Below, piece after piece: positions 2,234 through 38,999 of a stretch of DNA of 39,486 nt; positions within the stretch are counted from its first letter, which is position 1, and every line of letters begins with the position of its first letter. The position numbers and the translations under genes were made by a program. The DNA is from Octopus bimaculoides. Taxonomy: Eukaryota. The notes beneath the pieces were generated by a model. That model worked only from the letters and a program-made list of their open reading frames with translations, was not told the origin of the DNA and did no database searches. Location: positions 16,863,525 to 16,903,010 of the forward strand of contig NC_068999.1 in the NCBI RefSeq assembly GCF_001194135.2, given 5' to 3'.

Positions 2234-3280
2234 TTGAGAAAAGAATTGAGAGGTAAAAACTCGACGTACATTGACAAGATTGAATGTCTTCGATTTATAG
2301 TAGGATTATGTTAAGACTAATGAGATTTTCTTTATCCTACCTGTCTATGAAAGTTTGAATAGATATGCATGTATATATGTGCATGTTTGTATGCATAACA
2401 TATATAATACCTACATAGGTATATTACATCTATCTATCTATCTATCTATACACACACACACACGTACAAATACATGTGCGTAGAAATGTAAACATAGATA
2501 AAGGATGAGAGAAAGTGGTGGATGATCGTAAGTAAGGGAAAGTCATTACACATACATACAAACATTATTAAATGCTGAGACAAAGGAAGAGTGAGGAGTG
2601 TTAATAGGCGAAACAGAGATTCATTAAATGTCTGATTTCAAATATGTCAGCCTCGAACCAACCAGATAATTGGCGCGGAAACAGTTATTCCAAAACGTCT
2701 AAGACCCAACAAGGGAATGCTAGATATAAAGTCAATGGCAAAAAGGTCGTTCGATATCTCTAAATTGTTTCGTATAACCTTGTCAGGCATCAGCTAAAGT
2801 ATGCATTACCCCTCACTCGTGAGATTTGCAAGCGGCGTTATAGTTTTGCCAAGAGTCAAGACAAACGATTATATATATACCTCCTCCCATGTCGAAGCTC
2901 ATCATTCCCAGCTGAGATAATGATGATAAAAATTTCGTTGAAACGTACAAAATCTGATCGTAACGACAACAAACTATCGCACAAAATATCCAATACTCAC
3001 TCAAACAGAGAAATATTTTCGTTGTACCTTTTGACATGTTTTTGCTAAACATATTCACATTCACATGAGAGCGAAGAAATATACTTAAAGAGGCCCGACA
3101 ATGATATTGATACTCTGTCTTTTGAATATCCTGCTCAAATTTAATGAGACAAAGAAAGCGAATCATCACTTAATATGCAAATGAAAACGAAACCTTACCA
3201 GATTTTATAACGTCACTACGATAACGTCGCACTAGATTAAGAGCTTACACTATAGAACGCCAGTTATTATAACATATATT

Positions 3281-3493
3281 AAGGCGTTGAGTTAGTAGAA
3301 TCGTTAGCACACCAGGCAAAATGCTTAGTGGTATTTCGTCCGTCTTTGCATTCTGAATTCAAATTCCACCGGGGTTGACTTTGCCTCTCATCTACGCTGG
3401 GTCGATAAAATAAATACCAGCTGAACACTGGGGTTGATATAGTAGTCTTACGCCCACCTTAAAATATTTGGCCTTGTGCCAAAGTTTGGAATC
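3281..3493 (+). mobile_element. SINE family A copy
   Basis: aaggcgttgagttagtagaatcgttagcac...aaatgcttagtggtatttcgtc...gaattcaaattccacc...gggtcgataaaataaataccag...ggccttgtgccaaagtttg. Confidence 0.9.
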
Positions 3494-5415: not shown

Positions 5416-5515
5416 NNNNNNNNNNNNNNNNNNNNNNNNNNNNNNNNNNNNNNNNNNNNNNNNNNNNNNNNNNNNNNNNNNNNNNNNNNNNNNNNNNNNN
5501 NNNNNNNNNNNNNNN
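5416..5515. other. Assembly gap (100 N)
   Basis: Run of exactly 100 N, typical of an unsized scaffold join. Other gaps: 13086-13228, 20102-20111, 21954-21963, 31047-31097, 35362-35371, 36121-36130. Confidence 0.95.
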
Positions 5516-8494: not shown

Positions 8495-8603
8495 GCGTTG
8501 TGTGTGTTTATATAAACACACACAACGCCCGGTCTGGGAATCGAAACCGCGATCCTCCGACCGCGATTCCGCTGCCCTAACCACTGGTCCATTGCGCCTC
8601 CAC
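8495..8603 (-). mobile_element. 3'-truncated SINE family B ending in a fold-back palindrome
   Basis: Minus strand gtggaggcgcaatggaccagtggttagggcagcggaatcgcggtcggaggatcgcggtttcgattcccagaccgggcgttgtg nearly matches 35905-35990. It stops at gtttat and its last 17 nt are repeated inverted (palindrome 8495-8528). Confidence 0.9.
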
Positions 8604-8726: not shown

Positions 8727-8952
8727 GCATAGATATATGTACATCCACTTTGCTACCCATTATTTACTAGTTCTACATTTGCTCACGAAATGACGTGCAA
8801 CACTTGATAATGAGGCTGTGACAGCATCTTTTATTCTAGTTCTTTTTGTTTCTACCAATTCCAGCCGCTAAGTTAACTCATTCATGATTTTTATCACTGT
8901 CTGTGACCTTATCGATGATTACCATCGTCTACAATTTTATGAATTTTACAGG

Positions 8953-9140
8953 CTTTATTATGTTGTTTAAATGTTTTTTCCTGTTCTTATGTTTGCATGT
9001 TAAATGGTTTTATGAACGGTCCGACCATACACAATACAACTGTATAGTCCATTATGTACATGCATTATAAAGGAACTGATTTTGAATTAAGGCAAGTTTC
9101 GCTGTGTTTCTGTCAAGTCAGTTGAATATATCAATGCTAC
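8953..9140 (+). repeat. Local direct duplication, copy 1 (copy 2 at 10765-10952)
   Basis: ctttattatgttgtttaaat...atgaacggtcc...gtatagtccatta...cgctgtgtttctgtcaa...gttgaatatatcaatgctac aligns without gaps to copy 2, with scattered substitutions. Confidence 0.95.
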
Positions 9141-10590: not shown

Positions 10591-10764
10591 GTAACGAAAA
10601 GCGAAGAAACTACAGTGATCACTGGGCCTGAATTTTGCATCCCAAACTTTGTAAACGGACATTAAATTCCAGCATTACATATCTCTTCTGATAAGAAAGA
10701 CTAGGTACACCTTTCCATTTGCTCTGCCGTTGTCGGTATATTGCAGGTTCTGATACTTCTGAGT

Positions 10765-10952
10765 CTTTATTATGTTGTTTAAATATTTTTTCCTGTTTCT
10801 ATGTTTGTATGTTAAATAGATTTATGAACGGTCCAACCGTACGCTACACAACTGTATAGTCCATTATATACATGCATTATAAAAAAACTGATTTTGACTT
10901 AAGGTAAGCTTCGCTGTGTTTCTGTCAAATCAGTTGAATATATCAATGCTAC
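10765..10952 (+). repeat. Local direct duplication, copy 2
   Basis: See 8953-9140. Confidence 0.95.
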
Positions 10953-13071: not shown

Positions 13072-13365
13072 TATAAATATATATANNNNNNNNNNNNNNN
13101 NNNNNNNNNNNNNNNNNNNNNNNNNNNNNNNNNNNNNNNNNNNNNNNNNNNNNNNNNNNNNNNNNNNNNNNNNNNNNNNNNNNNNNNNNNNNNNNNNNNN
13201 NNNNNNNNNNNNNNNNNNNNNNNNNNNNTATATGCGTGTATGTATGTATTTATATATATATGTGTGTGTATGTTTGTGTTAGTATATATGTTTGTATATA
13301 TATGTATATATGTGTGTGTGTGTATGTATATACGTATATATATATATATATATATATAGATATAT

Positions 13366-13429
<64 letters not shown>

Positions 13430-13430
13430 A
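13021..13430. repeat. (TA)/(CA)/(TG) microsatellite block spanning an N gap
   Basis: Directly visible. Confidence 0.95.
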
Positions 13431-13989
13431 TATCGTTCTATTGGTATTGTTGGGGAAGTTTGTATAAAAATAGATGATTAAGTTTGCACGGTTCTCTATA
13501 TAGAAAATTCTTCGTATTTGTAAATTTAACCTTCTATCTGCTTTGTGTTATTGACAGAGTAATCAATGCATCAAGGTAATGTCCTTTCTTCTGCTTTTAA
13601 TGTTTTATTGCTCATTTTTTTCTTAGTAGAAGAAATAATGCTGACGTGTTAATTACATTTAAGATAATCTGAATAAATGTTCTAATTCATACACTTCCAG
13701 TTTGCAACCTTGTAACATGGAAATGAATTAAATATTACACCTATGTTTATTAATTTGCTACTGAAATATTCATAAATAGAGACCTCTATAAAACATCTTA
13801 ATTCTAAATAAGTTGGTCAGAATATGTATATGTGTGTGATGTGTATGTGTGCGTGTACGCATGTATGTATGCATGTATGTATACACAAACACACACATGC
13901 GGGTATCTTACGCATGTTTATAATCTTGATCACATGAATGAATATTCGGTATTGCATTACATTTTATAATCACGTATTGTTGAGAATGA

Positions 13990-14162
13990 GCGTAGGCGTG
14001 ACTGTGTGCATATGAAACTTGCTTCCCAAGAAGTTGGTTTTCGGTTCAGTCATACTGCACGGCACTTTGGGAAATTGCTTTCTACTATAGTCAAATGCCG
14101 ACCAGAGTTTTGTGAGAGTGGTTAACGGAAGCTGAAAGAATCTCGTTATATATACGTTTTAA

Positions 14163-14247
<85 letters not shown>

Positions 14248-14620
14248 CCCACATGTGTAAATATAAACAGACTAACATGTGTCTTTATATGCACCGAAAT
14301 GTGTTTAAAGATACAAATAAGATTATAATTGTTTTGTAAGTGTAATTTACCTGTTTTTCTAACGACATCTCTTCGTTCGAAAATAAATTATTTTTTTTCT
14401 ATCCATATATATACACACAGACCCAGACACGCATACACACACATAGACACACACACACACACACACACATACACACACACACATACACGCACACACACAT
14501 ACACACACACCCACACACACACAAACATATCTATTGAGGTCAGTTTGTTCAACTGAAGTTTTCAAGGTGTTGCCTCAGCATGGCTGTAGTTCAATGACTA
14601 GACCAGATAAACGATAAAAG
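13990..14620 (+). mobile_element. SINE family D with internal microsatellite expansion
   Basis: Head gcgtaggcgtgactgtgtg...ggttcagtcatactgcacggcactttggg...ctactatag...aagctgaaagaa (13990-14152), (CA)/(TA) tracts, tail aaggtgttgcctcagcatggctgtagttcaatgact (~14533-14620). Tail is similar to 26915-26970. Linking head and tail relies on recalled octopus SINE structure. Confidence 0.6.
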
Positions 14621-15924
14621 TATATTGCCGGATGACATATATCTTTGCTAAAATACGCTTAATTCCACTGGTCTCTGGGATGTCCAAATAATAACGAATT
14701 TACCTTCACAGATGTGTTTTGTTTGAATTGTTAGACATCTCCATCAAATGATATTTCAAACATTATAGTAATAAATACCCACTTAGTAACTAATATGATC
14801 CTGCCTATGGAAAAAAAATCGTATGGATGATTAAACGTAAAATAACGTTGAAATTAAACCTGTTCGATTGGGCTGATTTAGTCTCAGTGAAACAGTAACT
14901 CATCATCTGCTTTAAGAAGCTGTAACTTCTTTTTAATTATAAATACGTTCTAAACGATTTCTAATTAAAATAGTTAATATTCTATGAAAAATCTTGGAAT
15001 AAATGTTCATTAAAAATAAAACAGCATGTGATCTTTTGTGTTTCTAGGCAAATAACTATCTTAGAACTTAGAACCATGATAAACCCTCATGTTTACGTTT
15101 GAACAAAGAACTTCAACAAAACAAACAGGAAACATACATAAATTATGACGTCTACGTTTATCTACAGTAAACGTAGAACCTAAGTTTCTTCTAAATCAGA
15201 AGTACTAATAGATACACAGAAGAATATATTATTACGAAAAATATATAACGGCATTATGATGACCGAATTCCATATCTTTAAAACATAAAAACTAGACGAA
15301 GTCATTGATACTTCTTGTGAATGCTTTGTTGAGCCAAGACGCGCTGCATATAACATGATGCAATAACATTGCTTCCCAAATTGTCTCAATGTTCAGCAAT
15401 TGTTTAATGAGAGGTAGTGAAGACAATTAAATGAAAATTTGAGAAATTCTGTAAAACACAGCATCAGATTGAACCAAAACAACTGCAGTAGTGGTGAAAA
15501 CATAAATACAACAAAGAACAGCAAAAGTCCTATATCCACCGTTTCTTCTCCATTTATCAGCCATGTTATGTTCAACTCTTAAACCACGTCCTAATCACTA
15601 CCCCCAGTTCTGTTATCCCCTGAAGTTCGGCGATATGGCTCTCCCTGCGCGGAGGTCATTGTTAAAGAAGTACACTCTAGGGGCCAATGACAGCCCTAAG
15701 AACTGCTACCTAAGAACTACTCCTGCCTTGGTAAAAAAAAATGCTGAAACTATTAAATTGAGTAAAGAACATTTAATGCATGTTTGCTTCAGTAACAATA
15801 TATTTCTTTCTGTGTGATCCCTATTCTTCTGTGAAAATACATACTCTACGTTATGTCACAGTTGTTCGTGGAAAAGGAGTATTACAGAACTAATCTTCAA
15901 AGAAAAGCCAAAACAACCCAACTA

Positions 15925-16050
15925 ATCTCTCTCTCCCTCTCTTCCTCTCTCTCCCACTCTTCCTCTCTCTCCTCCTCTATCCATCTCTTCCACCCCTTTC
16001 TCTACCTCTCTTCCACCTCCTCTCTCTTCCTCTCTCTTCCTCTTCTCTCA
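15925..16050. repeat. Polypyrimidine (CT-rich) low-complexity tract
   Basis: About 125 nt almost entirely C/T. Confidence 0.9.
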
Positions 16051-17282
16051 AATACTCTTTGATATGGGGTATTTTTTAAATCAGAAAATATTTTGCTGTA
16101 TCAGCGGTTGTTGTATGCTTCAATGCACGTAGCAGAAATATTAAGAGTAGAAACTAATGTCAATATGTGCAATATAGAGTGCAAGAATTTCATTGTCGAT
16201 GAACAAGAAATAACAATGAAATTTTTTTTTTAATGTGTTTGAAAGAATAGCGGAATAAAAGTTTGGGGCGTTTCCATGGTTGATTAATTATGTATATCGT
16301 GTAATATTAAAGAATCTAACAAGGTTTCAAATGATATATATTCGTGAATATGATAGAAAAAATATTTCAGATAAAAATGGCATTAACTGAAAATGGTTTT
16401 AGCATGAAAAACTACAACTTAGAAAACGAAATAATTCATTCCATGCCACCTAATTTATTTTCAAATATCATAAAAGAAAATGACCAAAAAGTTAAATTAA
16501 ATACTATGAATAAATCATCTGCCTTCTCTCATCTAGAATAATCATGATCATAGAATATTATTAAAGAGGCTCTGCTTTCGATAACTATAGTTAAACGGTC
16601 CAACTCCCATATTCGTTAAAGAACTCATAAAGTTATTTGATATTATTTTATTGTTATTTGATTGCTATTCGTACTAATTAAACTTTACACAAAATCTAGC
16701 TGAATTCTCCTTCCTCTTTTATAAAAGGAAAAATATTTAACAGCAACAAAATACGACGCGAACAGTATCAGAAATTCAAGAAAAATAAAACGAACATTAC
16801 AGTAAAAATGCAAATTATTTATTATAGTGATTTTTGTTATATGCAATATCTCATAAATCATTTAGCAACTGGTTTCGATTTATTTTTCTAACATGAAATG
16901 GCGTGTTAGGATTAATCATGGATCGCGGTGGGTAATACCGGGCATTGTGATTAATGAACCACTACCTCTAGTAAAACGCCCGTTTACATGAACACGAAAA
17001 AAAAATACACTAAAAAACAAAAAATTGAAAGTTTACGTCATCAATTAATGTGGTCTTTTTTTTATGACTTTGTCATCGATTGGAATGGGTTCATGAATTA
17101 ATTTCTTCATCTCTTCATATTAGAAAGCAATAAATAAGCATAATAATAATAATAATAAAGAATACAGATTTTAATGTATTGCTGAGGGAAATTTCAAGTT
17201 TGATATCAATTAAAAAATATTAAAAATATCAGATAAAGATAGCAAAAATTTACGTGCCAAAATTTTAATCTTTTGAGAAAAC

Positions 17283-17405
17283 GTACTCGTATTCAATAAT
17301 AGAGCTTGCAAGAAAACATCATATGTCAAATTTTCTTTAATGCAGCTGTGTTATATTATCGAATATTACATATATTTATTTAGACTATCAATATAACTAT
17401 AGTTA

Positions 17406-17436
<31 letters not shown>

Positions 17437-17932
17437 TTAATAATTATTATTATTATTACTTTTTTTCTTCTTTTTATTCTTCTTCTTCTTATTATTATAG
17501 TTTAATCCGGCGAGCTGGCACAATCGTTAGCCCGCTGGGCGAAATGCTTAGCTAGATTTCATTCTGCAGTTCTGAGTTCAAATTCTACCGAGGTCGACTT
17601 TGTCTTTCATCTCTACGGGATCGATAAATTAACTACTAGTTAGGTACTGGAGTCGACCTAATCGACTGCCTCCTCCCACCAAATTTCTGGTTTTGTGCTA
17701 ATAATAATAATAATAATAATAATTATTATTATTATTATTATTATTGTTGTTGTTGTTGTTGTTCTAAGGCAGCGAGCTGGCAGAAACGTTAGCACGCCGG
17801 GCGAAATGCTTAGCAGTATTTCGTCTATCATTACGTTCTGAGTTCAAATTCCGCCGAGGTCGACTTTGCTTTTCAACCTTTCGAGGTCGATAAATTAAGT
17901 ACCAGTTGCGAGCTGGGGTTGATCTAATCGAC
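17283..17932 (+). repeat. Inverted segmental duplication, left arm (unique DNA plus two tandem SINE A copies at ~17506-17698 and ~17766-17975)
   Basis: Reverse complement of 18620-19275, including a 126-bp non-SINE segment with one mismatch and shared diagnostic SINE variants. Confidence 0.95.
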
Positions 17933-17978
17933 TAACCCTCACCCCCAAAATTTAGGGCATTGTGCCTAGATTAGAAAA

Positions 17979-18150
17979 CAATCGTTAGGGCGTCGGACAA
18001 AGTGGCAGTTCTTCTGACCTTACTTCTCAGCTCAAATCTCACCGAAGTCGACGTTGCCTTTCATTCTTTGGAGGTCAATATAATAAGTACCAGTTGAGCA
18101 TTAGCATCGATGTAACTAGGTAACAGCCTCCTCCAAAATTTGGAATCTTG
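17979..18150 (+). mobile_element. SINE family A, degenerate, in the inverted-repeat spacer
   Basis: atcgttagggcgtcggacaaa...gctcaaatctcaccgaagtcgacgttgccttcattc...ataagtaccagttgagcatt. Confidence 0.75.
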
Positions 18151-18379
18151 TAACTATAGTAAAAATATTTATCATTATAGTGATTTGCCAGAGAACAGGT
18201 GGCGGTTTCAAATCGACGGAAATATTTTGACACAAATTAAATTTAAATGTTGAAGTTAATCTGATTTTTGTGTATTATTAAATTGTTTATAAACAACTTC
18301 CACGCTGCTATTGTTATTATCATTTTTATCGTTTGTAAATGCATTGAGCTGATTGTATTGTTATCGCGTCGAAAAAAAA

Positions 18380-18619
18380 AAATGCTTATCAATATTTTCA
18401 CCGCTCTTTACGATCTGAGTTCAAATCACACCGAGGGTAATTTTAAAATTTATCCTTTCCGTGTCGATAAAACTAAGACCCAGTAAAGAACTGGGATCGT
18501 TATAGTCGATAATCTTAATCTCCCTAAAATTCCTAGTCGTTTGCTAAAGCATAAAAATGAACTACTAGTACTCTTGCTTGCACTCTGAGAAGCTGGCGAG
18601 CTCGCAAAATTGTTAACGC
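18380..18619 (+). mobile_element. SINE family A, degenerate, plus a truncated SINE head at 18593-18619
   Basis: aatgcttatcaatatttt...ctgagttcaaatcacaccgagg...gtcgataaaactaagacccag, then ggcgagctcgcaaaattgttaacgc cut at the arm junction. Confidence 0.7.
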
Positions 18620-19082
18620 GTCGATTAGGTCGACCCCAGATCGCAACTGGTACTTAATTTATCGACCTCGAAAGGTTGAAAAGCAAAGTCGACCTCGGTG
18701 GAATTTGAACTCAGAACGTAAAGATAGACGAAATAATGCTAAGCATTTCGCCCGGCGTGCTAACGTTTCTGCCAGCTCGCTGCCTTAATTATAATAATAA
18801 TAATAATAATAATTATTATTATTATTATTATTCCTTCTACTATAAGCACAAACCCGGAAATTTTGTGGGAGGAGGCAGTCGATTAGGTCAACTTCAGTAC
18901 CTAACTGGTAGTTAATTTATCGATCCCGAAGAGATGAAAGACAAAGTCGACCTCGGCAGAATTTGAACTCAGAACTGCAGAATGAAATATAGCTAAGCGT
19001 TTCGCCCAGCGGGCTAACGGTTGTGCCAGCTCGCCGGATTAACTATAATAATAATAAGAAGAAGAATAAGAAGAAGAAAAAG

Positions 19083-19152
<70 letters not shown>

Positions 19153-19275
19153 TAACTATAGTTATATTGATAGTCTAAATAAATATATGTAATATTCGAT
19201 AATATAACACAGCTGCATTAAAGAAAATTTGACATATGATGTTTTCTTGCAAGCTCCATTATTGAATACGAGTAC
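18620..19275 (-). repeat. Inverted segmental duplication, right arm (SINE A copies at ~18620-18787 and ~18843-19039 plus unique DNA)
   Basis: Reverse complement of 17283-17932. Confidence 0.95.
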
Positions 19276-20111
19276 ATCCAGTAGCATTTCTAGCAATACT
19301 TTACTCTCTAAGTCCATCGGTATCAACTTGTCGGGCTCAATCAAAATAATATACCAGACAGAGAATTGGACCACAACTCCAATTTTCTCTAAAATTACTG
19401 TCCAAATTACTGGTAAAATTTAAAATAATTATTAATATTCCAAGCTATTTATATAGCGGAACATAGAAATGCATGCTCTTCTATTTTACACGGCGAAAAG
19501 TCTATTCTATGAACACTAATGCGCGTATATTGTGGAGAAGTTTCAGAATGCATAATTCTTGGTCTTTTTCTCTTCACTTTCTCTTTCTCCTACTCCTCCT
19601 ACTTTTCTTCACTACCACAAATCCTCGCTCTCAATGCCGTCATCAGCGTCGTCGTGGTCGTCAGCATCATCATCATCATCATCATCGTTTCATTTACTCG
19701 TTTACACTATTAGCGAGTGCAGATCCGTGTGTGTTCGTTATATGCAGAGCTACATTTACAGTTTTTCTATTGTACCAAAACAAAACCCTGTAATATGCAT
19801 GCTGCGCCTGATACCACAATGGACGGACGTTTTAGCGATGTTCTCAATTTTTTTTTATCTTCTTAATGCAAGAAAAATGTATGGGTTTTTTTCTGTTTTC
19901 CTTTTTACTCCTTGTAATCTGTTCATCTCGAAATAAATTTAACTAACTATTTGTAATTCTGATGACACGATAAGGTGTTACTCAGGTATGAGTCCGCCTC
20001 GTCTTATAGTGGAAACAAATAGAAGCTAATGAATTCATAATATAATCGTATATTCCTTTGTCATTTATTTCTTATTTCCAGAAGTGTATATATATGTTTG
20101 ANNNNNNNNNN

Positions 20112-20630: not shown

Positions 20631-21200
20631 ATTACTTAACGTTTATGTGCTACTGACTGGAAGTCTTATTACAACACTGGAAAAAAAAAAATTCTTAACT
20701 TCGATATTATTCAGTCTTCTTTTAAAATATGGGTTGCGTAGGGGCTTTTCTTTTAAATAGTTTTAACATGGCATATTAGCAGCCTATTTTGAGTTACCGA
20801 ATATTTTCTATTGTTTCGCCCTACTTTTCGCAACTGCCAATTTAGGCTATATTTTTTTTTAATATGTTAGTTTCCTTGAAATCAAAAACTCCTTGTTTTC
20901 TTTATTTCAAGTGTCGTTTGTTCTTCCTTAAATAGTTATTTTTTAATGTTTCTACAGTAGATATTTTGTAATAGATTTAAAGTTTTAAATAATATAGTTC
21001 TCACAATCGCAAAGCCCATATATTTATATTCAAGATTTTCTGTGATATATTAGACCCCTCCAAAAGTAATTTCTACCATTATATCACAATTTGAAACAAC
21101 TATATTGGTGTAGTCTTTCTGGTTAGATTTCAAAATTCATTTATCTTCTACATGAAATAGAGTAACTGCAAATTATTAATGAGAGGGTTAAACTATTGCT

Positions 21201-21426
21201 TTCAAATTCTGGCGCAAGGCCAGCGATTTTGAGGGAGAGAGCAAATCGATTACATCGGACCCAGTGCATAACTGGTACTTATTTTATCCCTCCCCCCGAC
21301 CCCGAAATGATGACAGGAAAAGTCGACATCGGCAGAATTTAAATGCAAAACGGGAAAATAAAATCTGATGAAATACCGCTCAGCAATTTACCCGGCATGC
21401 CAACGAATTTGCCAGCTCACCGCCTT
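21201..21426 (-). mobile_element. SINE family A copy
   Basis: ttcaaattctggcgcaaggcc...aactggtacttattttatc...aagtcgacatcggcagaattt...gccagctcaccgcctt. Confidence 0.9.
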
Positions 21427-21919
21427 AGCGGATTAAAACATAAAAATTCATGCCTTATTTTTGGATTTATATCTGCCTTAACAACAAATATTGTCTGATA
21501 ATTACAACAGTTTCTGTTATTAATTAGTGTGCTTCTTTAATAATCGAACCTATATTTTGTTTGCGTCTGTGCATTATAAACTGCTTAGTTCATTTAGAGC
21601 ATGTAAATCGGTGTTTTGATTTATATTGTTATTACAACTACTCTGTCTAATGCCATTTTAGTGTTCTTCGTCTTACCATTTCAGAGATTAAGACCGTCTT
21701 AGCGATTACAAATTTCTAACACTTCCTCTCTTGCTCCACACAGTTTTAATGCTTTCTTCATTTATTCATATACATATCTGAATTGCTTTTATATATTGCG
21801 GTCGTTCCAATTTAAGTACGTTTTCTTGTGTTTGTGCCAAATGCTCACTTGTCTGCAATGTCAATCTCCCCTTCTCACTCTCTCACACATACTCTCACTG
21901 TCTGAATATACATACATAC

Positions 21920-21953
<34 letters not shown>

Positions 21954-21963
21954 NNNNNNNNNN

Positions 21964-36392: not shown

Positions 36393-36824
36393 TGAACAAC
36401 AACATTTAACTTAATTTCTCCCTGGAAAACTCTGCTTGAAATTCAAAATAATTCTGTTCTCAAAATTGTTATCCACGTCCACCATGCACTAAACGTCCTT
36501 ATAACTACTTGCCAGGTGAAGTTCTTTCATGCCAAATGAAATCAATGGGTTTGTTTTCACGATAGACGCAACTCACAACCAGAACTGCACTGGAGGTGAG
36601 AAAAACAATTCGACAAAAGCCCGCAAACAAAAAAGCAAAGACTCTAAGAGAGTGCATGCCGAATAGTCTCTGCAATCTTCGTAAATATCTGTTCCTGGAG
36701 CCTACGGTATGACTGTGCCCGACCTGGTTCTCTTTACTGAAATGCCCTTTTAGCCGTATCAGGTCAAGATCTTCTGCCACCTCGCCGCCTTAACAACAGT
36801 AACAACAACAAAAATATTAATCCT

Positions 36825-37035
36825 TTCTACTATAGCCTCAAGGCCTGACATTTCGAGTGAGGGGGTGAGACTACTACATCAACTCCATTACTCAACTAAT
36901 ACTTAATTTATCGACCACGAAAGCATGAAAAGGAAAGTAGACCCCGGCGGAATTTGAACTCGTAACATAAAGACAGACGAAATACCGCTAAGCATTTTGC
37001 CTAGCGTACTAACGATTCTGTCAGCTCGCCGCCTT
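36825..37035 (-). mobile_element. SINE family A copy (plus an isolated head at 36771-36791)
   Basis: atacttaatttatcgaccacgaaagcatgaaaaggaaagtagaccccggcggaatttgaactc...cagctcgccgcctt. Confidence 0.9.
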
Positions 37036-37092
37036 AATAATAACAACAACAACAGCAACAGCAGCAGCAGTAGTAGTAGTAGTAGTAAAAAA

Positions 37093-37456: not shown

Positions 37457-37489
37457 AAGAAGAAGAAGAAGAAGAAGAAGCCTTGGTGC

Positions 37490-37694
37490 TATAGGTGCAA
37501 GTCTTGAAATTTGGGTGGAAAGGCCTAGTCGATTAAATCCAATCTAGTGTCCGACTGGTACTTTATTTTATCGACTCCAAAAGGATGAAAAGTAAAGTCA
37601 TTCTCGGTGGATTTTGAACTCATAACGTAAAGACGGTCGAAGTTCTGCTAAGCATTTTGACCGGCGTTCGAACGATACTGCTAGCTGGCAACTT
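37490..37694 (-). mobile_element. SINE family A copy
   Basis: gactggtactttattttatcgactccaaaaggatgaaaagtaaagtc...tgaactcataacgtaaagac...gctaagcattttgaccggcg. Confidence 0.85.
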
Positions 37695-38194
37695 TAACCA
37701 CATTGATAATAATACTAATAACAATAAGAAAAGTTATATTTATTGTACCTACACTCGTTGGTTCTCTCGACTCTTAATGTATTATAAATTTTTAATGCTT
37801 TTATCATTCATAGTGATATTTCAGCAACACATATCTCATACTTAAACATGTATACATCATATTTTAATTCACCACAATAAAGAACAACAGGAAAATATGT
37901 TATAATAAACCGTTTATTAATAATATATATACCTGCAACTACTAGAGTATCAAGTATTCAGCTGCAAATACTCCAAATGCATTACGTTTATTATGAATTT
38001 CTATAGACTTCTCATACTATATATAAGAGTTTAAAATACGTGCAGTTATTGGATTCTGCAGCGGTTACTCTATTGTATGTAATTTTCCATTGATAATTTG
38101 TTTGACTATCATTCATGCTAATACAGGAAATGTATATTTGCATGGTAATAGAGATGATAATGGGTTCACATGCACTCATTGATTTTAAAGTTTG

Positions 38195-38564: not shown

Positions 38565-38800
38565 GCCTATTTCGTTATTGCCCACAAGGGGCTAAACATA
38601 GAGGGAACAAACAAGAACAGACGAACGGATTAAGTCGATTACAACGTCCCCAGTGCGTAACTGGTACTTAATTTATCGACCCTGAAAGGATGAAAGGCAA
38701 AGTCGACCTCGGCGGAATTTGAACTCAGAACGTAACGGCAGACGAAATACCGCTAAGCATTTCGCCCGGCGTGCTAACGTTTCTGCCAGCTCACCGCCTT
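38565..38800 (-). mobile_element. SINE family A, best-preserved (young) copy
   Basis: Minus strand aaggcggtgagctggcagaaacgttagcacgccgggcgaaatgcttagcggtatttcgtctgccgttacgttctgagttcaaattccgccgaggtcgactttgcctttcatcctttcagggtcgataaattaagtaccag. The central part resembles Meta/MESC-type SINE domains (from memory). Confidence 0.95.
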
Positions 38801-38999
38801 CAACATAGGCACTCATATTAATTATTCTTAAATCTTATGCACAACCAAATTGTATATATTTCATGCCTTAAATACTAGGTACGAAAGTACGCAAACGTTA
38901 TATACATATATATGAATACATGCACCATTATATACAATTATTTTGCTTAACGTTTTAGGTGTCTATAATCTAGAGAAAATACACACATTCTCATCACAC

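What the first reader, a model, noticed from the sequence alone, without database searches (positions are those of the whole stretch)
17283..19275. ~2 kb inverted segmental duplication (650-bp arms, 687-bp spacer)
The arms share non-repetitive DNA, microsatellites and two SINEs with private variants, so this is one duplication event rather than independent SINE insertions. About 18 substitutions were counted by eye over ~480 non-microsatellite bp. The inner junction cuts a SINE head at 18619, and no target-site duplication was found (seen). If co-transcribed it would fold into a very long dsRNA, an ideal ADAR or Dicer substrate in a lineage known for extensive A-to-I editing (established plus inference). 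It could also promote back-splicing or act as an inversion hotspot.
Basis: partly seen in the sequence, partly recalled or inferred. Interest (0 to 1): 0.7.

Follow-up and report, generated by a model that had tools for sequence, protein, structure and literature searches.

The report
Local inverted duplication inside a SINE cluster
A 650-bp stretch of ordinary repeat-rich DNA was copied once, in reverse orientation, into an old SINE 687 bp downstream; this is a real but ordinary DNA-repair or replication scar that could form a long RNA hairpin only if it is transcribed, which could not be tested.

Summary
The arms are 17283-17932 and 18620-19275 (inverted), with a 687-bp spacer. There are 17 substitutions in 471 non-microsatellite bp (K2P 0.037), and all indels lie in microsatellites. 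Both arms carry the same ordered string: 114 bp of unique DNA, a microsatellite, SINE A, a microsatellite, SINE B. So this was one duplication event, not independent SINE insertions.

Two new points. SINE B is full length on the left and runs on into the spacer, but it is cut at the junction in the right arm. The right arm lies between the head of an older SINE (18589-18619) and what is probably the rest of that SINE (19276-~19365). The left arm is therefore the source, and the right arm is a copy inserted with no target-site duplication and up to 5 bp of inferred microhomology (GTCGA).

The best mechanism is fold-back (snap-back) priming at a break, or a double template switch at a replication fork. 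Both are known kinds of event. A transposon, an RNA-mediated copy and an assembly artefact all fit poorly.

As one RNA the locus would form about 615 arm-to-arm base pairs (MFE -1149 against -428 kcal/mol for shuffles). Transcription, editing, small RNAs and the host lineage could not be tested. Interest is low to moderate.

The parts
17283..17932 (+). Left arm (650 bp), the source copy of the duplication
   Evidence: Gapped alignment to the reverse complement of 18620-19275. SINE B runs through the arm boundary to its natural end at 17978, so this copy is the undisturbed one.
17283..17396 (+). Non-repetitive segment U, shared by both arms (partner 19162-19275)
   Evidence: 113/114 identical between the arms. 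There is no other match in the window.
17397..17501 (+). Compound microsatellite (AAT)n(ATT)n(CTT)n, duplicated with the arm
   Evidence: Length differences between the arms (13-, 2- and 1-bp indels) lie here.
17498..17707 (+). SINE A (profile positions 4-218 of 224); partner 18835-19044 on the minus strand
   Evidence: nhmmer E=6.7e-57 and 1.2e-54. The partners are 94.7% identical, against at most 81% to any other copy.
17700..17764 (+). Palindromic microsatellite (AAT)8(ATT)7 followed by (GTT)6
   Evidence: The 9- and 17-bp indels between the arms lie at its two edges.
17760..17978 (+). SINE B, full length (profile 4-222). The arm ends inside it at 17932 (about profile position 176). The right-arm partner 18620-18790 stops there.
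   Evidence: nhmmer E=2.6e-70 for the left copy. The right copy covers profile 6-176 only, E=1.3e-57. The partners are 96.4% identical.
17933..18619 (+). Unduplicated spacer (687 bp): tail of SINE B, SINE C (17980-18163), unique DNA, SINE D (18335-18544) and the head of SINE E. All are on the + strand.
   Evidence: nhmmer hits with E=3.9e-28 (C) and 3.7e-22 (D). The unique part 18164-18334 has no other copy in the window.
18589..18619 (+). Head of the old SINE E, cut by the insertion. Bases 18620-18624 (GTCGA) may belong both to it and to the arm, which would be microhomology.
   Evidence: nhmmer profile 8-42 at 18588-18622, E=2.7e-4 in a restricted search. The head shares ATTGTTA[T/A]CGCGTCGA with the neighbouring SINE D.
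18620..19275 (-). Right arm (656 bp), the derived inverted copy inserted into SINE E
   Evidence: Its SINE B copy is truncated, and it is flanked by the head and the probable remainder of SINE E.
19276..19365 (+). Probable remainder of SINE E, resuming directly after the right arm (moderate support)
   Evidence: Right flank alone, + strand: profile 115-161 at 19321-19369, E=1.3e-3. Head joined to flank gives one collinear hit over profile 9-157, E=5.1e-5. A pairwise alignment to SINE D alone is not significant (117 of 500 shuffles reach the score).

Best explanation
This is a genuine, moderately old, local inverted duplication made at the DNA level. The locus was once a run of five same-orientation SINEs (A to E) with microsatellites. 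A break or a stalled fork arose inside the head of the old SINE E, at about 18619-18624. The free 3' end of the + strand (...GCGTCGA-3', inferred) paired with TCGAC at 17928-17932 on the same strand (fold-back, or snap-back) or on the sister template. It was then extended leftwards for about 650 nt to 17283. The extended end was released and joined to the other side of the break, where SINE E resumes at 19276. The outcome is source arm, 687-bp loop (spacer), inverted copy, with no target-site duplication and at most about a dozen bases of SINE E lost. Both copies have since mutated independently (K2P 0.037), and the microsatellites have changed in length. The structure most likely has no selected function. 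If a Pol II transcript runs through it, it would incidentally form a duplex of about 615 arm-to-arm pairs, the kind of substrate ADAR hyper-edits. Shown: the anatomy, the polarity, the absence of a target-site duplication, and the folding potential. Inferred: the break, the priming microhomology, the choice between fold-back and fork template switch, and neutrality.
For: Arms, spacer and divergence are established. It was a single event: the arms share unique DNA found nowhere else in the window, and partner SINEs are 94.7% and 96.4% identical against 67-90% for other copies. On polarity, SINE B is full length on the left (profile 4-222, running into the spacer) but stops at profile 176 in the right arm. 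The right arm is bracketed by the SINE E head (E=2.7e-4) and a collinear SINE remainder (E=1.3e-3 alone; a joined single hit over profile 9-157 with E=5.1e-5). On microhomology, the SINE E head shares derived variants with neighbouring SINE D (ATTGTTA[T/A]CGCGTCGA, 15/16), so GTCGA at 18620-24 is plausibly native to E and identical to the start of the copy. Derived substitutions, polarised against 12 other SINE copies, fall on both arms (about 8 left, 9 right). That fits real age, not copy errors or errors in a single arm. The geometry matches published fold-back events. Human inverted duplications have unduplicated spacers of 766-70,466 bp and 2-8 bp of inverted microhomology (PMC3907307). 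Yeast shows local foldback templated insertions at breaks, with polymerase delta synthesis at one end and end-joining capture of the other (PMC11724301).
Against: No empty-site sequence (orthologue or other allele) was available, so the pre-insertion state of SINE E, the microhomology and any deleted bases are inferred, not observed. The SINE E remainder is weak: 3.9 bits, and not significant in a pairwise comparison with SINE D. Experimentally documented fold-back templated insertions at breaks are mostly 5-34 bp (PMC11724301), far shorter than 650 bp. The human fold-back cases are megabase-scale and terminal. This event therefore sits between the documented size classes. The sequence cannot separate break-induced fold-back from a double template switch at a fork. 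Neutrality is assumed, not shown.
Confidence: 0.68

Rival explanations
1. The locus is transcribed through both arms, for example inside an intron or a long non-coding RNA. Its hairpin would then be a working substrate: hyper-edited by ADAR, or diced into endo-siRNAs that also match SINE transcripts. This would be an hpRNA-like locus with biological consequences. This concerns function and is compatible with the fold-back origin.
For: The predicted hairpin has about 606-618 arm-to-arm pairs, perfect helices of 135-154 bp, and an MFE of -1149/-1123 kcal/mol. Shuffles give -428 +/- 11 and the direct-orientation control gives -519. The arms contain two SINEs, so any small RNAs would match a family with more than 20 copies or fragments in this window alone. 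If the host is an octopus, long near-perfect dsRNA-forming loci are unusually common and account for most hyper-editing (PMC5625713). About half of TE insertions are reported to be transcribed in some tissue (PMC12988792).
Against: There is no evidence of transcription. No exon, conserved ORF, Rfam family or tRNA gene was found in the 39-kb window. The host lineage is unverified. Incidental editing of such pairs is the norm and does not imply function. Mismatches are scattered on both arms, as expected for neutral decay.
Confidence: 0.2
2. The 2-kb unit is a foldback-type or long-TIR DNA transposon. The 650-bp arms would be its terminal inverted repeats.
For: The inverted arms are exactly terminal to the unit. 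Foldback-like elements have long, internally repetitive arms.
Against: There is no target-site duplication: the flanks read ...GAGAAAAC | GTACTCG...CGAGTAC | ATCCAG. The arms are made of host SINEs and microsatellites. SINE B runs uninterrupted from the arm into the spacer. A SINE whose head lies inside the unit appears to resume outside it, which cannot happen if the whole unit moved. There is no second copy of segment U or of the spacer in the window, and no transposase ORF.
Confidence: 0.03
3. It is an assembly artefact: a mis-joined haplotype, or a chimeric or palindromic read, created the second arm.
For: The window is a gapped scaffold with seven N runs, the nearest at 13086-13228 and 20102-20111. 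Repeat-rich, microsatellite-rich DNA is error-prone to assemble.
Against: No gap touches the structure. The arms differ by 26 substitutions and 5 indels, so this is not a perfect palindrome of the kind read artefacts produce. A divergence of 3.7%, with derived changes on both arms, does not look like allelic variation in one misplaced arm. A unique 687-bp spacer separates the arms. The copy sits neatly inside an older SINE whose two parts remain collinear.
Confidence: 0.07
4. It is an RNA-mediated copy: retrotransposition or twin priming of a read-through transcript covering U, SINE A and SINE B.
For: The arms contain SINEs, so a partner LINE machinery exists in this genome.
Against: The copy lacks the 3' tail of SINE B, the part a LINE reverse transcriptase would need (it ends at profile position 176 of 224). 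There is no poly(A) or tail repeat at either end of the insert and no target-site duplication. Microsatellites and unique upstream DNA were copied collinearly.
Confidence: 0.02

Closest known systems
Fold-back (snap-back) inverted duplications with an unduplicated spacer (Hermetz et al. 2014, PMC3907307; yeast foldback inversions, PMC10622511)
   Same: The layout is the same: source segment, single-copy spacer that corresponds to the fold-back loop, then an inverted copy. Short inverted microhomology lies at the junction between spacer and copy (2-8 bp reported; 0-5 bp inferred here). The spacer size falls near the low end of the reported range (687 bp here, against 766-70,466 bp).
   Different: The published cases are kilobase- to megabase-scale and usually terminal. 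They pass through a dicentric chromosome and carry a terminal deletion. Here only 650 bp was copied, the chromosome continues normally on the far side, and almost nothing was lost.
Local foldback templated insertions at double-strand breaks (Yu et al. 2024, PMC11724301) and Pol theta-type snap-back synthesis (own knowledge)
   Same: An inverted copy of nearby sequence is inserted at a break. [quoted passage not shown] There is no target-site duplication and little loss of sequence.
   Different: Reported inserts are mostly 5-34 bp and are templated right next to the break. Here the insert is about 650 bp and was templated 687 bp away.
Replication template switching (FoSTeS/MMBIR, own knowledge; short-range template switches in great apes, PMC7954356)
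   Same: Two switches, to the opposite-strand template and back, give a precisely inserted inverted copy of nearby DNA.
   Different: Evolutionary short-range template-switch events are typically tens of bp. FoSTeS/MMBIR events in disease are usually much larger and complex.
Inverted SINE pairs (such as inverted Alu pairs) as ADAR hyper-editing substrates (Porath et al. 2017, PMC5625713)
   Same: Neighbouring inverted repeats containing SINEs could pair within a single transcript. The duplex is long and nearly perfect.
   Different: The pair arose by segmental duplication, not by two insertions. The duplex is therefore about three times the length of a SINE and much less diverged (3.7%, against 10-33% between independent copies here). 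Transcription and editing were not shown.

Membership tests
Fold-back / template-switch inverted duplication | Two arms in inverted orientation derived from one local source | tested here: met
   The arms are 650 and 656 bp and collinear across unique DNA, microsatellites and two SINEs.
Fold-back / template-switch inverted duplication | A single-copy spacer (loop) lies between the arms, contiguous with the source arm | tested here: met
   The 687-bp spacer is not duplicated. SINE B runs unbroken from the left arm into the spacer.
Fold-back / template-switch inverted duplication | Short inverted microhomology at the junction between spacer and inverted copy | tested here: inconclusive
   GTCGA at 18620-24 is shared by the arm and, by analogy with SINE D, by the interrupted SINE E. 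The pre-insertion sequence itself is not available.
Fold-back / template-switch inverted duplication | No target-site duplication and no transposon termini | tested here: met
   The flanks of the right arm and of the whole unit share no direct repeat.
Foldback / long-TIR DNA transposon | Target-site duplication flanking the element | tested here: not met
   The flanks read GAGAAAAC | ... | ATCCAGTA.
Foldback / long-TIR DNA transposon | Multiple dispersed copies with the same termini | not testable with these tools
   There is only one copy in the 39-kb window. No eukaryotic genome collection was on hand, and the metagenome scan for a 26-mer from the arm found nothing.
Foldback / long-TIR DNA transposon | The element is a discrete insert: sequence features do not run across its boundaries | tested here: not met
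   SINE E has its head inside the unit and its probable remainder outside it.
hpRNA / ADAR hyper-editing substrate | A long, near-perfect intramolecular duplex is possible | tested here: met
   About 606-618 arm-to-arm pairs, and an MFE of -1149/-1123 against -428 +/- 11 kcal/mol for shuffles.
hpRNA / ADAR hyper-editing substrate | Both arms lie in one transcript | not testable with these tools
   No RNA data were available. No exon or known RNA gene was found in the window.
hpRNA / ADAR hyper-editing substrate | Clustered A>G mismatches between RNA and DNA, or 20-23-nt small RNAs from the arms | not testable with these tools
   No RNA-seq or small-RNA data were available.
Independent inverted SINE insertions | Homology is confined to the SINE bodies, and each has its own flanks | tested here: not met
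   The homology covers 114 bp of unique DNA plus two microsatellites in the same order.

The most novel reading that the evidence does not exclude
The hairpin is expressed and acts as an hpRNA-like locus. Because its arms carry two copies of the genome's abundant SINE, it would yield endo-siRNAs or heavily edited dsRNA that act in trans on SINE-containing transcripts. The 96%-identical arms might also drive a population-level flip-flop inversion of the spacer. The assembled orientation is the ancestral one, because the tail of SINE B is still attached to the left copy.
Probability: 0.05. Interest if true: 0.55.

Novelty: new member of a known kind. Interest (0 to 1): 0.22.

Why it matters
As a structure it is a clean natural example of a mid-sized (650-bp) fold-back or template-switch insertion. 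It has a readable polarity and a nearly intact target. In size it falls between the tens-of-bp events seen in break-repair assays and the kilobase-to-megabase events seen in human disease. It also shows how segmental duplication can produce a dsRNA-forming locus that is longer and cleaner than any pair of independent SINE insertions. In a genome rich in such structures, that is one more source of ADAR substrates. On its own it changes no open question, and its value would come only from RNA or population data.

Tried and rejected
1. tRNA and Rfam scans of the window, plus a relaxed Rfam scan of the youngest SINE copy, found nothing useful. The tRNA origin of the SINE is therefore not shown.
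2. I looked for genes, to learn whether the locus is intronic. All ORFs of at least 110 aa are low-complexity microsatellite translations. Pfam gave only a Tc3/Sleeping-Beauty HTH relic at 27699-27938(-) and a sub-threshold TMEM144 match at 36508-36789(-). The TMEM144-like ORF had no homologue, so I dropped it as an exon.
3. Identifying the organism failed by every route: a protein search with the Tc1-like relic, a full-text search for four SINE sequence strings, exact-protein look-ups of three ORFs next to or across the outer junction, and a metagenome scan for a 26-mer from the unique arm segment.
4. A pairwise alignment of the right flank to SINE D is no better than shuffles (117 of 500). 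The case for a SINE E remainder therefore rests on the profile search alone.
5. Segment U looks less diverged than the SINEs (0.9% against 4.5%), which could hint at gene conversion. The difference is not significant (Fisher p=0.086, or 0.31 without CpG sites), so I dropped it.
6. Non-allelic homologous recombination between SINEs is rejected, because the junction joins profile position ~42 of one SINE to position ~176 of another in opposite orientation.
7. Error-prone copying as the source of the divergence is rejected, because derived changes are spread evenly over both arms.

Full report
**Check of the observation**

The repeat finder reports three collinear inverted blocks: 17283-17496/19062-19275, 17502-17751/18793-19042 and 17765-17932/18620-18787. 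A gapped local alignment joins them into one pair. The left arm is 17283-17932 (650 bp). The right arm is 19275-18620 (656 bp, reverse complement). The spacer is 17933-18619 (687 bp).

Outside the microsatellites there are 17 mismatches in 471 aligned bp. That gives p=0.036 and K2P=0.037, with 11 transitions and 6 transversions, 5 of them at CpG sites. The five indels (13, 2, 1, 9 and 17 bp) all lie in or at the edge of microsatellites.

**One event, not several**

I built a 224-position profile from nine SINE copies in the window. With it, each arm reads in the same order:

- a 114-bp non-repetitive segment U (17283-17396)
- a compound microsatellite
- SINE A (17498-17707)
- a palindromic (AAT)n(ATT)n microsatellite followed by (GTT)n
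- SINE B (from 17760)

U is 113/114 identical between the arms and occurs nowhere else in the window. SINE A and SINE B are 94.7% and 96.4% identical to their partners in the other arm, but only 67-90% identical to any other copy. Homology stops sharply at 17283/19275 and does not extend into the flanks. Independent SINE insertions are therefore excluded.

On the left, SINE B is full length (profile 4-222, 17760-17978, E=2.6e-70). It runs straight through the arm boundary at 17932 into the spacer. Its right-arm partner stops at profile position 176, exactly at the junction (18620-18790).

The spacer holds three more + strand SINEs: C (17980-18163), D (18335-18544) and the head of an old copy, E. 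The head of E covers profile 8-42 at 18588-18622, with E=2.7e-4 in a 200-nt one-strand search.

Directly after the right arm, the + strand again matches the profile further along (positions 115-161 at 19321-19369, E=1.3e-3 in a 200-nt one-strand search). When 18560-18619 is joined to 19276-19475, nhmmer returns a single collinear hit over profile 9-157 (E=5.1e-5), with a gap of about 12 positions at the join.

This second piece of evidence is modest. It scores 3.9 bits, and a pairwise alignment to SINE D is no better than shuffles. Taken with the truncation of SINE B, it still indicates that the left arm is the source. The right arm is then a copy inserted into SINE E with little or no loss of target sequence.

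**Junctions**

No direct repeat flanks the right arm (...TTGTTAACGC | GTCGATTAGG...GAGTAC | ATCCAGTAGC) or the whole unit (GAGAAAAC | GTACTCG...).

The heads of SINE D and SINE E share the string ATTGTTA[T/A]CGCGTCGA (15/16). This includes variants outside the arm that depart from the family consensus. The GTCGA at 18620-18624 is therefore plausibly native to SINE E as well as being the first five bases of the copy (the reverse complement of TCGAC at 17928-17932). That would be a 5-bp inverted microhomology at the junction between spacer and copy. It is an inference, because the empty site is not available.

**Mechanism**

The anatomy is a source arm, a single-copy loop and an inverted copy, with no target-site duplication, a near-intact target and possible microhomology. 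This is the signature of fold-back (snap-back) priming at a resected break. A double template switch at a replication fork would give the same result.

In the fold-back version, the + strand 3' end ...GTCGA-3' pairs with TCGAC at 17928-17932. It is extended leftwards to 17283, perhaps the limit of resection about 1.3 kb from the break. The extended end is then joined to the other side of the break.

Published parallels:

- Human inverted duplications have unduplicated spacers of 766-70,466 bp and 2-8 bp of inverted microhomology (PMC3907307).
- Yeast shows local foldback templated insertions, with polymerase delta synthesis at one end and NHEJ or alt-EJ capture of the other (PMC11724301).
- Short-range template switches are documented in great apes (PMC7954356).

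This event is intermediate in size between those classes. That is the main caveat, and also the only mildly unusual feature.

**Age and authenticity**

I polarised the SINE differences against 12 other copies. Derived changes fall on both arms in similar numbers (about 8 left, 9 right, the rest ambiguous). The divergence therefore accumulated after the event on both copies. It did not come from error-prone copying or from errors confined to one arm.

The nearest assembly gaps are at 13086-13228 and 20102-20111, and neither touches the structure. The arms are 3.7% diverged and differ in microsatellite length. A palindromic-read artefact or a misplaced haplotype is therefore unlikely, although only long reads can exclude it.

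U appears less diverged than the SINEs (0.9% against 4.5%), but this is not significant (p=0.086).

The tail of SINE B is still attached to the left copy. The assembled spacer orientation is therefore the ancestral one, and nothing here shows inversion.

**Rivals**

- A foldback or long-TIR transposon fails on the target-site duplication. It also fails because SINE B and SINE E run across the element's supposed boundaries, and there is no second copy in the window.
- An RNA-mediated copy fails because the insert lacks the 3' tail of SINE B, any tail repeat and a target-site duplication.
- Recombination between SINEs fails because the junction joins non-homologous positions (about 42 and about 176).

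**The functional idea**

Folded as one RNA, 17283-19275 gives an MFE of -1149 kcal/mol on the + strand and -1123 on the - strand. There are 606-618 arm-to-arm pairs and perfect helices of 135-154 bp. Shuffles give -428 +/- 11, and a control with the right arm flipped to direct orientation gives -519. The physical premise is therefore sound.

Nothing could be learned about transcription. There are no tRNA or Rfam hits. No credible exon was found: ORFs are microsatellite translations, the only Pfam hits are a Tc3-type HTH relic and a sub-threshold TMEM144 match, and the latter has no homologue.

The host could not be identified. The 34% G+C content, the microsatellite load and a SINE that from memory looks like a CORE-SINE are compatible with a cephalopod. 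This is a lead, not a test.

If the host is an octopus, loci able to form long near-perfect dsRNA are reported to be exceptionally frequent and to carry most hyper-editing (PMC5625713). About half of TE insertions are reported to be transcribed in some tissue (PMC12988792). Incidental editing is therefore plausible, but that would also make this locus one of very many.

**Verdict**

It is best explained as a neutral fold-back or template-switch insertion of a 650-bp inverted copy into an older SINE. It is a new instance of a known kind of event. The dsRNA, ADAR, Dicer, back-splicing and inversion ideas are physically possible but untested.

Noticed in passing
window 1456-38806 (e.g. 3275-3492, 21198-21432, 27263-27454, 34008-34222, 36823-37040, 37483-37700, 38595-38806): One SINE family of about 224 bp has at least 20 full or partial copies in 39 kb. 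Copies are 67-90% identical to each other. Five same-orientation copies are packed into 17.5-19.4 kb. The central part resembles the CORE-SINE/MIR core from memory, but ARAGORN and Rfam do not recognise a tRNA head.
   Followed up: partly
window 38595-38806 (-): This is the youngest-looking SINE copy, 89.9% identical to SINE B. It departs from the family tail soon after ...TAATCGACTTAATCC, within a few bases of the profile position (~176) where the duplication breakpoint cuts SINE B. It may be a subfamily with a different 3' module, or a coincidence.
   Followed up: no
window 17700-17745, 18793-18832, 19086-19152: Perfect palindromic compound microsatellites (AAT)n(ATT)m of 40-67 bp occur only inside the two arms. 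They could form hairpins or cruciforms on their own, and all the length differences between the arms lie in or next to microsatellites.
   Followed up: partly
window 27699-27938 (-): A short 5' relic of a Tc1/mariner-type transposase is present (Pfam HTH_Tnp_Tc3_1, E=4.1e-5; HTH_SB, E=7e-4). It is broken by frameshifts and stops after about 90 codons. The word-indexed protein search found no homologue.
   Followed up: partly
window 8950-9140 and 10762-10952: A 191-bp direct repeat, 90% identical and about 1.8 kb apart, is not SINE and not microsatellite. It may be another small local duplication or an unclassified repeat.
   Followed up: no
window 8512-8603 and 35905-35996: A 92-bp inverted match at 92% identity lies 27 kb apart. 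It is probably a second interspersed repeat family.
   Followed up: no
window 5416-5515, 13086-13228, 20102-20111, 21954-21963, 31047-31097, 35362-35371, 36121-36130: There are seven runs of N (334 bases in all), so the window comes from a gapped scaffold. The contig that carries the inverted duplication spans 13229-20101.
   Followed up: yes
window 36508-36789 (-): An ORF has a sub-threshold Pfam match to TMEM144 (17.4 bits against a cut-off of 26.2). The protein search found no homologue, so it is probably a chance match.
   Followed up: yes
window 25815-26541 (-), 32140-32577 (-), 28200-28330 (+): Very long trinucleotide and homopolymer tracts give spurious ORFs of 145-231 aa rich in Ser, Thr, Tyr or His. 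They are microsatellite arrays, not genes.
   Followed up: no
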